Shown: positions 8,893-63,217 of the stretch, one piece after another | How positions within the stretch are numbered: position 1 is the first letter of the stretch | How the letters are laid out: each line of letters starts with the position of its first letter | Origin: Blastocystis sp. Blastoise | Taxonomy: Eukaryota; Protista; Bigyra: Opalinata | Assembly (NCBI GenBank): GCA_039096225.1 | Contig: JBBPEB010000011.1 | Coordinates: 620,001-684,000, forward strand | Reading direction: 5' to 3' | DNA: 64,000 nucleotides | Notes under the pieces: generated by a model | Databases searched by the model: none | What the model saw: only the letters and a program-made list of their open reading frames with translations | What the model was told of the DNA's origin: nothing | Program-made: the position numbers and the translations under genes

Positions 8893-11800
8893 TTATAGAT
8901 CTGATTGAACCAATTCGGAGAGTACTCTTGTCGCTAAAGCACTATATAAAACATTCATTAATAAGTTATTAAACAAAAATATTCATAATACTTTAACGAA
9001 GATTTTTCTTCTGACAATAGAAACCCTTCAAGATTTTCTTTTTTTGTTGATATATTATATATTGTTTCATCTACACTCTCTTTTGTTATCATTTTATATA
9101 TATATACTTCTTTCTCTTGTCCTATTCGATGTAAACGATCTTCTGCTTGCTTATCAACCTTAATAATAATTATATATAGAATATATATTTAAATAATAAT
9201 TATAGTTTTAGAATAGAATTGATTCATAAGTAATTTTTTATATACATGTTTTTAATCAAATAATATATTCAATTATGAATAGATTATATAGATATTTATA
9301 TATATATATACATAAGGATTAAAATCAACATCAAACAGTATACTTCTATTGGCTGCCGTTAAATTGAGTCCTTGGCCACCACTTCGTGTAGTCATTAATA
9401 ATATATTATATTGTTCTTTTTGATTAAAATCATCAACAATTATTTGTCTATCTCCAACAGGTGTCTATATATATAGTTATTATATATATAGTTATTATAT
9501 ATATAGTTATTATATATATAGTTATTATATATATATATATATTACTTGTCCATCAATTCGAAGTGTAGAATATCCATGATATGTTAATATAAACTGTAAA
9601 ATATCTAATATCTTTACCCACTATATAGAATAGTATCCAGAAATATAATATAATAATTATATTCTAGTATAAAATAAGACTATAATATATATATATATAC
9701 TTGTGAGAACAAGAGTACTTTCTCCTTATTCTGTATAAATGATGGTAATAAATGAAACAGATGACGCACCTTGCCACTACACTCATATACAGATATATCC
9801 AACTATATTATATAATAATAATAATAATAATAATAATAATAATAATAATAATAATAATAATAATAATAATAATAATAATAATAATAATAATAATAATAAT
9901 AATAATAATAATAATAATAATAATAATAATAATAATAATAATAATAATAATAATAATAATAATAATAATAATAATAATAATAATAATAATAATAATAATA
10001 ATAATAATAATAATAATTCTAGTATACTTCAAGTGTCTGAACTGTCTTCTTTCGTTTATTCTCCTTCTCTACCTCTCGAAGCAAGGAGTCAATCTCCATA
10101 TCACTCTGGGTATATAAATATTCATATATCTTTTGTATAGATGTATCTTCTATAAATAATATAACAAATATATATATATAGGATAATGATTACAATATAT
10201 ATATATATATATATACCAAAGTAATGAATATCATAAAGAAGATCCGCCACTGATTTTAATTTATCGCCACGATATATATGACCTAATTATTATTATTATT
10301 ATTATTATTATTATTATTATTATTATTATTATTATTATTATTATTATTATTATTATTATTATGTATGTATGTATGTATGTATGTATGTATTATTATTATT
10401 ATTATTATTATTATTATTATTATTATTATTATTATTATTATTATTATTATTATTATTATTTATGTATTATTATTATTATTATTTTATTATTATTATTATT
10501 ATTATTATTATTATTATTATTATTATTATTATTATTATTATTATTATTATTATTATTATTATTATTATTATTATATATACGAATAAGAAGAGGGTGATTT
10601 GCTATTTTTCGAAGCGAAGTAAATATATGACTATCCTCCATGTCTATATATATATATATATATATATAATATATATATATATACTTTCAATATCCTCAGG
10701 AATGACGCATGTATTGTCAACTACTTTATATAGATTATTAAATATATATATATATGCATACATTTCTCTTTCTGAATATTCCCATGGTTATTTTTATTCT
10801 CTTTATATTGCGTTAGAATAGAATCATATAAAGTCTTCTGTTCAGATACCATATTGATTTCTTCAATCTATTTATTAGTAATATATATTATCTTTATAAT
10901 ATTTATTTTTAAATACAACTATGTTTTGTATATATTTATTATTATTATATATACTTGAATATGTTTAGCAGGTAAATCCTGAAGCACATGACTCTTTTCT
11001 CGTCGAAGAAGAAATGGCTGAAGAATCTAATATATATATATATATATATATATATATATATATATACATATATGTATTTGTTTTCGTTAATAAATATATA
11101 TATATACCCGCTTCACATAATGAATGACTTTTTCATTCTCTTTTTCCTCATTTGTTTTATATCTCTCGATAATCGCGGTTATTTGTGTAGAATAAGAAGG
11201 CATAACAAAAGATATTAATGTTAATAACTCCTATATATTATTATTATTATTATTATTATTATTATTATTATTATTATTATTATTATTATTATTATTATTA
11301 TTATTATTATTATTATTATTATTATTATTATTATTATTATTATTATATTATTATTATTATTATTATTATTATTATTATTATTATTATTATTATTATTATT
11401 ATTATTATTATTATTATTATTATTATTATTATTATTATTATTATTATTATTATTATTATTATTATTATTATTATTATTATTATTATTATTATTATTATTA
11501 TTATTATTATTATTATTATTATTATTATTATTATTATTATTATTATTATTATTATTATTATTATTATTATTATTATTATTATTATTATTATTATTATTAT
11601 TATTATTATTATTATTATTATTATTATTATTATTATTATTATTATTATTATTATTATTATTATTATTATTATTATTATTATTATTATTATTATTATTATT
11701 ATTATTATTATTATTATTATTATATACAGCTATATTATTTTGAACAGGTGTTCCAGTTAATATAAGTCGATTTCGACTTTGTAATTTCATCAATCTAGTA

Positions 11801-60700: not shown

Positions 60701-63217
60701 CTATTATATTATGTCTCTATATATATATATATATATATATATATATATATGAATAGTTATAGAGTAATTAATATTATAATAAACATTATATAAACATTAT
60801 AATAAATATAATAATAATAAATATAATAATAATAATAATATCTTTATACATCATCATCTTTTGTTAGAGGAGAACAGGTGGCGATAATTGAAGCGAGTTC
60901 TTTCATCGTTTGTATTTTTATATTAGTGTCATGTTTATATACATATAAATAGAAATGTATAAATAATTGATTTAAATGAAAAGTAAAATTTGAATGAAGA
61001 GGTAAAGAATAGAAAGAAGAATCAACACATAAAGCAATTATCTATATATATATATTATATATATTAATGATTTTTATTACAATTAATACAATTAATATAA
61101 TGAATATAAATAATAATAATAATAATAATAATAATAATAATAATAATAATAATAATAATAATAATAATAATAATAATAATAATAATAATAATAATAATAA
61201 TAATAATAATAATAATAATAATAATACATATACATATATATATATACATCATATAGATCATTGAGTCGAGTTTCATTCATTTGATTGCCTCCTTGAGTCT
61301 CTAGCCATACACGAAGAAACGTAACCAGACGGCTGGCATAAAGCGAAGAATAATAGAGATCTTCATCATCTATATAGAATATGGATTATAAAAAAATATA
61401 AAATATATTATATCTAATAATAATAATAATAATACATAATAATATTTATTCTAAAATAATACAATATAATATATATATCATCATTCATATATACATATAT
61501 TTATAGTATTAATTATAATAGTATATATATATATATACTTAATGATTTATGTTTCATATTATTATTCATTATATCCATATACTGATTATATTCATCCATA
61601 ATTATACTCCATATATCATTACTACTATCAATAGTACAATAACTATATATATAATGTATATATAATATATATAATATATATAATATATAATATATATATA
61701 TATAATATATATATATACTCTACAATATTTTCAATACATTGTAAAAGACAATTAAATCTACATTCTTCGGATTGTTTATATTGTTCAGTATATATAGTAT
61801 CTTTTATATCTATATCTATATTCTTATCTTTCCCTTTTTTCTTCTTATTACTACTATCTTTTTCTTGTTCTTTCAAACAAAGAGGTTTAATAGTTTTTAT
61901 TAATAATCCAAATAATAATTTACTATTCATATGTAATTGTTTCTGTACACCTCGAATTGATTCAAATAATAATGTAGAAATACCCTCAATTACCGTGGGA
62001 TTCTCACTATTTTTACTTTCACTATATCCTTTTAATATTCGTGTCAATTCTTTACCAGCATCCTTTGGGGGAAGTCTATATATATATACAGATATATTAT
62101 TATTATATTTATTATATTTCTTATATTTATTATATTTATTATATTTCTTATATTTCTTATATTTCTTATATTTCTTATATTTATTATATTTATTATATTT
62201 ATTATTCAATAATATAAATAAAACAATAATATAAATAAAACAATAAACATAACAAAATTTAATTAAAAATGAATAATAATATATATATATATATATAGAA
62301 TTACCTTCTAAGTAAATAAGCATAACTTTCTGCAGCAAAATGACGAATAAATGGTTTTTTATGTATAAATAGAGTCACATAATGTTTACGAATAATAGAG
62401 ATATCTTGAACTAATAATTTAGATAAGAATTTGAATATAAGAGATAACGTTTTAAACACTTCTGCTGTATCTTCAGGCTGTTTCTCATCAACTACTTCTA
62501 ATAATGTATCTAAAATCTTTGAAAAATAAGGTAAGACTTCAGCTCTATATATATATATATATATTATTATTACTTATTATTATTCATTATTCTAATAATA
62601 CAGAATTAAAATAAAATACCTATGAAAACACATTTATTAATGATGATAAACATAATAATAATAATTTATATAGAATATAAATATATATATACCCACAATC
62701 AAGTGTAAGAAGAGCTGTTAAACGAAGAAATGCAGAAAAACCTAAATTATGTTTAACAATATTTATACATAAAAGATCCACTATCTTTGATAAATTATGA
62801 ATTAATAATGGAAGACTTTGGCACAGTGGGTTTACCTATACAAATAAAGAATATATTAGATAGGTTTTTATTATAAAAAAAAATAAACATACATCATCAA
62901 AAAAATCACTGAAATCAGCTGTGATATTAAGTTCACTACGTATAGTTAGTAATTCATAGGCGAAGTGATTTGTATTCTCAGGGATCTAAAGAGTATTTAA
63001 GACTAGTAACAACAAGAATGAGTTATATACAGCCTCAGATCTACCGCTATCACTACGAATTGTCTGTAGAACATCTAATTTGATCTCATTAATACGTTCT
63101 GCAAAATTTAAGAAACGATATCTATAATGGATAGTATATATTGATTGATTTATATTATTATTTTACATACTTCTTTTTAGAATCAGTAGTATTTAAACTT
63201 TTCGGTCTGTAAGACAT
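48720..63217 (-). CDS. UTP20: Small subunit processome component UTP20 (HEAT repeats), about 35 introns
   Basis: YRFLNFAERINEIKLD, HFAAESYAYLLR, ILYGRL, DLFECLTHLQIHRRARGL, LKNKSQRERDESR, FLVQNLNYELETGR, basic C-terminus. Confidence 0.92.
53079..53259. repeat. (AAT)n intronic microsatellite
   Basis: Directly visible. Confidence 0.95.
58627..58802. repeat. (AAT)n intronic microsatellite
   Basis: Directly visible. Confidence 0.95.
59256..59422. repeat. (ATT)n intronic microsatellite
   Basis: Directly visible. Confidence 0.95.
59543..59630. repeat. (TA)n tract at an intron acceptor
   Basis: Directly visible. Confidence 0.95.

What the first reader, a model, noticed from the sequence alone, without database searches (positions are those of the whole stretch)
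11171..62002. Recurrent GC-rich quasi-palindromic DNA motif (ATTCCCGCGGTT / AACCGCGGGAAT family) embedded in exons regardless of reading frame
Seen: the exact 12-mer ATTCCCGCGGTT or its reverse complement occurs 5 times (12089, 35972, 37879, 50976, 52110). Close relatives: 23339 TTCCCGCGGGAA, 47073 TTCCGCGGGAAT, 50744 AACCGCGGTT, 11171 AATCGCGGTT, 18275 and 50834 AATCGCGGGG, 21388 AATCGCGGAG. CGTG/CACG versions: 11859, 14761, 24623, 37254, 47261, 49743, 56000, 56135, 61990. CCGCGG alone occurs 8 times; a rough estimate at ~20% GC predicts well under 1. All but two copies (14761, 21388, both upstream of genes) are in exons and none is in an intron. They span six unrelated genes, all three frames and both orientations (LTAG, SRGN, ITAGM, FPRL, SAGM, NRGF, NRGN, IPAV), forcing codons such as GCG, CGC, CCG, CGG and GGG that are otherwise rare here. 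Protein-level selection therefore does not explain them. Structure: half-sites (ATTCCC / AACC / AATC) around a 2-bp GC/GT/AC spacer. None is in SDHB or the intron-poor protease genes. Inference: a dimeric-protein binding site or modification target overlaid on coding DNA, perhaps for nucleosome positioning, SMC or origin loading, recombination or exon marking in an otherwise nucleosome-hostile AT/microsatellite genome. I know no described system matching it.
Basis: partly seen in the sequence, partly recalled or inferred. Interest (0 to 1): 0.9.

Follow-up and report, generated by a model that had tools for sequence, protein, structure and literature searches.

The report
Genus-wide Blastocystis DNA motif reshaping genes
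Blastocystis gut protists carry thousands of copies of one 14-base, nearly symmetric DNA word in promoters and inside protein-coding exons; it is actively kept, bends codon and amino-acid choice, and behaves like the binding site of an unknown protein, something known from bacteria but, as far as I could find, not described in a eukaryote.

Summary
Real and far above chance. The window fits Blastocystis sp. Rus-B (tortoise). The motif is a 14-bp pseudo-palindrome, ATWMYCR|YGRKWAT, with fixed spacing: 2118 strict copies genome-wide against 107 for a control; CCGCGG is 17 against 0.8 in codon-shuffled CDS. The scan noted it before on other pieces of this genome.

New here:
- It is not exon-specific: about 10-fold enriched in intergenic DNA too, concentrated 86-225 bp upstream of ATGs.
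- It is genus-wide: about 4-fold excess across other lineages, and 61 cores in one 7.5-kb HEATR5 gene of ST7.
- It is actively retained: 52/61 cores are kept in an 85%-identical sister lineage against 38% of other all-GC hexamers, graded by flank quality.
- It bends amino-acid choice, turns over between distant lineages, and is absent from mobile DNA.
- Unlike half-sites pair preferentially.

No methylation or Vsr signature was found. The best reading is an unidentified dimeric DNA-binding protein whose sites are kept by weak selection (0.5). The main rival is protein-dependent molecular drive of DUS/HIP1 type (0.3).

The parts
   Evidence: PWM 17.3; SNF2 Pfam hit on another exon
11169..11182 (.). 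motif copy, SNF2 exon
   Evidence: PWM 16.1
11857..11870 (.). motif copy, SNF2 exon
   Evidence: PWM 18.9
12089..12102 (.). motif copy (exact 12-mer), SNF2 exon
14759..14772 (.). promoter-proximal copy, 225 bp upstream of the SDHB ATG
16176..16189 (.). weak copy in an SDHB exon
   Evidence: PWM 12.2
18273..18286 (.). motif copy, exon of TruD/PUS7-like gene
21386..21399 (.). promoter-proximal copy, 107 bp upstream of the ATG at 21500
23338..23351 (.). motif copy, exon of gene 21500-27050
   Evidence: PWM 20.8
24623..24636 (.). motif copy, exon of gene 21500-27050
   Evidence: PWM 15.9
30444..30457 (.). weak copy in the legumain exon
   Evidence: PWM 11.1
31946..31959 (.). intergenic copy between legumain and cathepsin X genes
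   Evidence: PWM 13.0
35970..35983 (.). motif copy (exact 12-mer), exon
37254..37267 (.). motif copy in a 4.2-kb exon
37879..37892 (.). motif copy (exact 12-mer) in a 4.2-kb exon
47071..47084 (.). motif copy, exon
47263..47276 (.). motif copy, exon
   Evidence: PWM 20.7
49743..49756 (.). motif copy, UTP20 3' exon
   Evidence: PWM 20.2
50742..50755 (.). motif copy, UTP20 exon
50832..50845 (.). motif copy, UTP20 exon
50976..50989 (.). motif copy (exact 12-mer), UTP20 exon
52108..52121 (.). motif copy (exact 12-mer), UTP20 exon
56001..56014 (.). weaker copy, UTP20 exon
   Evidence: score 10.6
56133..56146 (.). motif copy, UTP20 exon
61989..62002 (.). motif copy, UTP20 5' exon
   Evidence: UTP20_N Pfam

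Best explanation
A sequence-specific dimeric DNA-binding protein, conserved across Blastocystis and possibly a heterodimer or asymmetric dimer, reads ATWMYCR|YGRKWAT. It works as a general chromatin-organising or regulatory factor. It sits 86-225 bp upstream of roughly a tenth of genes, and its occupancy inside gene bodies is also weakly beneficial. Sites therefore arise by point substitution wherever the protein sequence tolerates them and are then kept by purifying selection in proportion to their affinity. SHOWN: enrichment, geometry, strand symmetry, promoter peak, graded retention, amino-acid bending, long-term turnover, absence from mobile DNA. UNKNOWN: the protein.
For: Fixed 2-bp centre with no off-register spacer in 50 sampled sites. 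Only 3 of 74 sites are perfect palindromes, so the sequence is read rather than a hairpin formed. No strand bias, GT 15 against AC 14. 7 of 14 intergenic sites lie in the 13% of intergenic DNA that is 50-260 bp upstream of an ATG, p about 0.001. A PWM trained on the tortoise genome predicts retention in ST7: 28/38, 34/38 and 37/39 by flank score, both directions pooled. Conservation peaks at motif positions 1-4 and 7. Unlike-half pairs number 249 against 158 expected from 56 and 112 like-half pairs. Most lineages carry about one site per 4-10 kb.
Against: Sixty-one cores in one ST7 gene and none in its neighbour are hard to explain as individually useful sites. Positions are mostly not conserved between distant lineages. 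No reader was found: CG-1, RFX, BEN, COE, CSL, KilA-N and ParB searches were blank. Retention alone cannot separate selection from biased repair or conversion.
Confidence: 0.5

Rival explanations
1. Protein-dependent molecular drive. The same reader biases homologous repair or gene conversion, so the bound allele is spared from breakage or preferred as donor. Sites accumulate nearly neutrally wherever coding constraint allows, as DUS/USS and HIP1 do in bacteria.
For: Runaway density in the ST7 lineage. Peptides able to spell the motif are 2-4 times enriched, and the motif is missing from recently mobile DNA; both match what is reported for DUS (PMC2817400). About the same fold-enrichment in every compartment. 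Blastocystis lacks NHEJ and relies on homologous recombination (PMC5608401).
Against: Promoter-proximal peak in AT-rich intergenic DNA. No GC halo around Rus-B sites. 0/8 compatible positions realised in ST7 cathepsin X against 20/35 in the gene next door, which needs an extra gene-specific term. No known eukaryotic mechanism of this polarity: recombination-activating sites erode.
Confidence: 0.3
2. The sites are targets of a DNA methyltransferase coupled to biased repair (Vsr/Dcm-like or HIP1-methylase-like) that converts near-sites into full sites.
For: CG/TG alternation at the centre. One C5-methyltransferase-like match in the genome.
Against: The TG/CA neighbours are enriched, not depleted, in Rus-B (CCACGG z=8) and at expectation in ST7. 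AT-centred sites with no CpG are common. CpG o/e is 0.85 and CpG is not hypermutable in ST7. No Vsr was found. A degenerate 14-bp graded site is unlike a methylase target. The single methyltransferase hit may be DNMT2 (inference, not tested).
Confidence: 0.08
3. An ordinary known transcription factor (E2F/DP) with exonic sites as by-products.
For: Seven E2F/DP domain matches in the genome. The best half contains the canonical TTTC[CG]CGC-like word, and the 1CF7 crystal DNA resembles the commonest site (PMC4686757).
Against: The symmetry axis is R|Y, not C|G. ATAATC halves and AC/AT centres lack the GGCGGG core. A separate E2F-homodimer-like word, TTGGCGCCAA, occurs 36 times against about 1.7 expected, which suggests E2F has its own motif here. 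By-products would not be retained at 85%.
Confidence: 0.07
4. RNA-level signal, transposon footprint, or quasi-palindrome template switching.
For: Mostly exonic. hAT elements are common in the genome.
Against: No strand bias and upstream copies exist. Sites align to orthologues without indels. Most sites are not self-complementary and unlike halves are preferred. No target-site duplications or shared flanks.
Confidence: 0.05

Closest known systems
DNA uptake sequences (DUS/USS) of Neisseriaceae and Pasteurellaceae
   Same: Thousands of copies overlaid on coding DNA. Motif-encoded peptides about doubled, preference for poorly conserved positions, absence from recently acquired genes (PMC2817400; here).
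   Different: DUS are non-palindromic 9-12-mers read by a pilin during DNA uptake in bacteria. This is a 14-bp two-fold site in a eukaryote with a promoter peak and no known uptake step.
HIP1 of cyanobacteria
   Same: Highly iterated GC-rich palindrome in coding DNA regardless of frame.
   Different: HIP1 is an exact 8-mer recognised by two methylases (PMC13756078). This motif is degenerate and graded, needs no CpG, and shows no methylation signature.
Bacterial chromosome-landmark sites (Noc NBS, parS, matS); from memory
   Same: 13-16-bp palindromes bound by dimers, often inside ORFs.
   Different: Those number tens per genome and are confined to domains. No ParB-family match was found here.
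Eukaryotic dimeric TF sites of similar shape: EBF/COE, RFX X-box, BANP, ZBED1/DREF (consensuses from memory); E2F/DP (PMC4686757)
   Same: Similar length and symmetry. The best variant equals the EBF optimum ATTCCCNNGGGAAT as I recall it, and fits the X-box geometry.
   Different: COE, RFX and BEN domains were not detected. None of these factors is known to fill exons at up to one site per 110 bp.
General regulatory factors (Reb1, Abf1, Rsc3) and exonic TF sites ('duons'); Dnmt5 CG periodicity in Micromonas/Ostreococcus (from memory)
   Same: Promoter-proximal sites and DNA-level constraint on codons.
   Different: Here one long motif changes amino-acid choice measurably and shows no periodicity.

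Membership tests
DUS/USS-type iterated motif | over-representation in coding DNA with enrichment of motif-encoded peptides | tested here: met
DUS/USS-type iterated motif | absent from recently acquired DNA | tested here: met
   0 strong sites in 21 kb of PLV-like CDS against about 9 expected, p about 1e-4; none in the Helitron
DUS/USS-type iterated motif | sequence-specific DNA uptake receptor and transformation | not testable with these tools
   eukaryote; no uptake system known
HIP1 | exact short palindrome recognised by DNA methylases | tested here: not met
   degenerate 14-mer, CpG-free variants, 3 of 74 perfect palindromes
Dcm/Vsr-type biased repair | depletion of T:G-derived neighbours and presence of a Vsr gene | tested here: not met
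E2F/DP site | GGCGGG/GCGCGC core with C|G axis | tested here: not met
   R|Y axis, AT/AC centres, ATAATC halves
E2F/DP site | E2F/DP proteins encoded | tested here: met
   7 matches
RFX X-box | RFX DNA-binding domain encoded | tested here: inconclusive
   no match; introns may split the domain and there was no positive control
EBF/COE site | COE DNA-binding domain encoded | tested here: inconclusive
   no match and no control
CAMTA, BEN, CSL or KilA-N sites | domain encoded | tested here: inconclusive
   no match; six-frame search of an intron-rich genome
BED-finger / domesticated hAT factor (DREF/ZBED1-like) | BED finger plus hAT dimerisation domain in a single-copy gene | tested here: inconclusive
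   one sub-threshold BED match and 47 hAT dimerisation matches, mostly multicopy; the sequences could not be fetched
ParB/Noc landmark | ParB-family protein encoded | tested here: not met
   no match while controls ring; introns remain a caveat
General regulatory factor site | promoter-proximal enrichment | tested here: met
   6.7 against 1.1 sites per 10 kb, p about 0.001; ab initio starts
General regulatory factor site | in vivo occupancy and nucleosome displacement | not testable with these tools
   needs MNase, ATAC or ChIP

The most novel reading that the evidence does not exclude
A eukaryotic molecular-drive system: a DNA-binding dimer biases homologous repair in favour of the allele carrying its site, so the 14-mer invades exons genus-wide and, in the ST7 lineage, rewrites whole proteins.
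Probability: 0.3. Interest if true: 0.92.

Novelty: new variant of a known kind. Interest (0 to 1): 0.76.

Why it matters
Iterated motifs that override coding constraint are a bacterial phenomenon (DUS/USS, HIP1), and whether selection or drive maintains them is a long-standing question. Here one occurs across Blastocystis, the commonest microbial eukaryote of the human gut, with more than 30-fold differences in density between lineages and between neighbouring genes. It would also give the genus a candidate core promoter element, may bear on its unusual GC heterogeneity and fast protein divergence, and matters for transgene design. I found no mention of it in the two genome papers or the toolkit paper I searched.

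Tried and rejected
No reads were laid, and those places were not sent to any search tool afterwards. Exon models are therefore ab initio only.

I used only pattern and family counts afterwards and fetched no further own-genome DNA.

Spliced models: these were searched exon by exon, by reference, and the joined search step was left out. Predicted exons were concatenated only inside scripts for codon statistics.

Rejected:
- Periodic spacing: none in Rus-B or ST7, CV 0.9-1.2.
- Link to splice sites or exon length: p 0.2 and 0.06.
- GC halo around sites.
- Gene-class bias in Rus-B: Poisson across genes, and a codon-bias proxy was flat to weak.
- Hairpin or template switching, methyl-directed repair, insertion footprint.
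- My first idea that the dense ST7 stretch is a PKS pseudogene: it is an intact HEATR5/Laa1 gene on the other strand.

One homologue search used an uninformative piece. Paper searches for the motif in Blastocystis found nothing relevant. Proteromonas and other stramenopiles were not examined.
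Full report
Source. The window is G000:C34:620001-684000 of a 33.34-Mb, 34-contig assembly. A window protein is identical to an NCBI protein of Blastocystis sp. Blastoise. Size and GC fit strain Rus-B from a Russian tortoise in Lind et al. 2025 (PMC12129017, Table 1). In that paper my term search found only the downstream gene element, not this motif.

Observation. CCGCGG occurs 8 times against 0.18 expected. Genome-wide the exact 12-mer has 249 copies against 0 for its reversed control, CCGCGG 2367 against 197, and the strict degenerate 14-mer 2118 against 107.

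Anatomy. I fetched 100 kb on each side, built a self-trained gene model with motif cores masked and derived a symmetric matrix. The unit is ATWMYCR|YGRKWAT. The commonest halves are ATTCCCR, ATAACCR and ATAATCR. The centre is any R|Y: among 50 sampled ATTCCC/GGGAAT sites, 10 are GC, 8 AT and 32 AC/GT, so a CpG is favoured but not required. The spacer is fixed at two bases. Only 3 of 74 local sites are perfect 12-bp palindromes. Unlike halves pair more often than chance: 56 and 112 like-half sites predict 158 mixed sites and 249 are seen (chi-square about 19, my arithmetic). ST7 shows the same direction (21 against 14.7). Coding constraints could contribute, so this only suggests a heterodimer or asymmetric dimer.

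Not a protein effect, but it affects proteins. In 99 kb of predicted CDS outside the virus-like block, synonymous shuffling gives 0.8 CCGCGG against 17 observed and 3.9 strong matrix hits against 43. The motif supplies 11 of 66 GCG, 7 of 27 CGC and 13 of 65 GGG codons. Peptides able to spell a top-scoring site number 33 against 8 in locally shuffled proteins, and 23 of the 33 are realised. The sense orientation is unbiased (GT 15, AC 14), there is no link to splice sites or exon length, no GC halo, and counts per gene fit Poisson.

Not exon-specific. Densities per 10 kb are 5.5 in exons, 6.7 at 50-260 bp upstream of start codons, 1.1 in other intergenic DNA and 0.2 in introns. Against composition-matched nulls intergenic DNA is about 10-fold enriched (14 against 1.4); introns hold 1 site against 0.07, which is too few to measure but is not a deficit. 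Seven of 64 genes have a site 86-225 bp upstream, p about 0.001. Mobile DNA lacks strong sites: a virus-like block with a D12 adenine methyltransferase, a Helitron and a DUF4218 element hold none.

Across the genus. Loci around cathepsin X and UTP20 orthologues from ST4, ST1, ST7 and unnamed gut-metagenome lineages (assigned to Blastocystis by homology and synteny) were scanned with the tortoise matrix. Ten loci give 30 hits against about 8 expected. ST7 (L029) is extreme: 69 CCGCGG in 21.7 kb against 5 GGCGCC, with flanks like those of Rus-B. Sixty-one lie in one intact, unannotated HEATR5/Laa1 gene and none in the adjacent cathepsin X gene. In the last HEATR5 exon 20 of 35 compatible positions are realised against 0 of 8 in cathepsin X, and the orthologue in a more distant lineage offers only 7 such positions. 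This rests on one ST7 locus. Between distant lineages positions mostly do not match and align without indels, so sites arise by substitution and turn over.

Active retention. A sister lineage 85% identical to ST7 (L043) keeps 52 of 61 cores, against 77 of 204 other all-GC hexamers (p 3e-11; reverse direction 52/60 against 77/168). Identity peaks at motif positions 1-4 and 7. Retention rises with the tortoise-trained flank score (28/38, 34/38, 37/39, both directions pooled). Fourfold-degenerate positions inside cores are conserved 31/33 and 28/28 against about 82% outside (p 0.09 and 0.007). The same specificity therefore acts in two deeply separated lineages. Retention does not by itself distinguish selection from biased repair.

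Mechanism. Fixed geometry, graded flanks, strand symmetry and upstream copies point to a dimeric DNA-binding protein (inference, about 0.85). Methyl-directed repair is unlikely: transition neighbours are not depleted, CpG is neither scarce nor hypermutable, no Vsr was found, and the one C5-methyltransferase match may be DNMT2. I favour a general chromatin or regulatory factor whose sites are weakly selected at promoters and in gene bodies (0.5). The main rival is drive through biased homologous repair (0.3), made plausible by the ST7 runaway, the parallels with uptake sequences (PMC2817400) and the reported lack of NHEJ (PMC5608401). The same paper reports no Scc2/Scc4 cohesin loader, which makes a loading-landmark role a lead only.

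Reader. CG-1, RFX, BEN, COE, CSL, KilA-N and ParB searches were blank. Most had no positive control and introns may split short domains, so these blanks are weak. E2F/DP domains exist, but the axis and the CpG-free variants do not fit E2F (PMC4686757), and a separate E2F-like word is itself enriched. One weak BED match and many hAT dimerisation domains leave a domesticated transposase open.

Limits. Gene models are ab initio. The matrix was trained on the same 264 kb it was scored on, though the fixed-word, genome-wide and ST7 tests do not depend on that. Spliced models were searched exon by exon and the joined search was left out. Consensus sequences of EBF, RFX, BANP, ZBED1 and Noc are from memory. 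Earlier scan notes reported the motif on other pieces of this genome; in the notes shown to me I saw no cross-lineage, retention or pairing result.

Verdict. A real, genus-wide, actively maintained 14-bp DNA site that reshapes coding sequence. It works like a bacterial iterated motif but is not a member of DUS or HIP1. I rate it a new variant of a known kind, interest 0.76.

Noticed in passing
L004-L006 (G000:C34 about 552.5-577 kb): Intron-poor block of about 19 genes with low GC3, a D12-class adenine methyltransferase (Pfam E 1e-33) and a P-loop ATPase; it looks like an endogenous Polinton-like or virophage-like element. Observed only. It lacks the motif.
   Followed up: partly
L009:4703-L010:742 and L010:3129-8664: Helitron (Helitron_like_N plus PIF1, about 1990 aa) next to a DUF4218 transposon-like gene; a related gene lies at L002-L003.
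   Followed up: partly
genome-wide (control): TTGGCGCCAA occurs 36 times against about 1.7 expected; it matches the E2F homodimer site. Seven E2F/DP domain matches exist, two of them 2 kb apart on C32 (possible atypical two-domain E2F).
   Followed up: no
L029 about 12000-19614 (FN668644.1): Unannotated intact HEATR5/Laa1 gene in the ST7 reference. The PKS at this locus is only an N-terminal remnant in ST7 and two related lineages, whereas ST4 has a full PKS next to cathepsin X.
   Followed up: partly
window 20368-20781: Intronless gene with clostridial hydrophobic-W (ChW) repeats, a likely lateral transfer from gut bacteria.
   Followed up: no
window 48720-63217, fragments near 4700-5330 and 53260-54500: UTP20 is predicted in two pieces, split near 51600 (perhaps a non-canonical intron or a model error); a degenerate partial copy of its 53-54 kb part lies near 4.1-5.3 kb.
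   Followed up: no
G000:C34:406469-406912: Single C5-cytosine methyltransferase match in the genome; DNMT2 or other not determined.
   Followed up: no
264-kb region: CACGTG (E-box) and a TGACGCAC/GTGCGTCA word are also enriched over a dinucleotide model; some copies may lie in repeats.
   Followed up: no
genome-wide: At least four multicopy hAT transposase families, one with about 19 copies of identical score.
   Followed up: no
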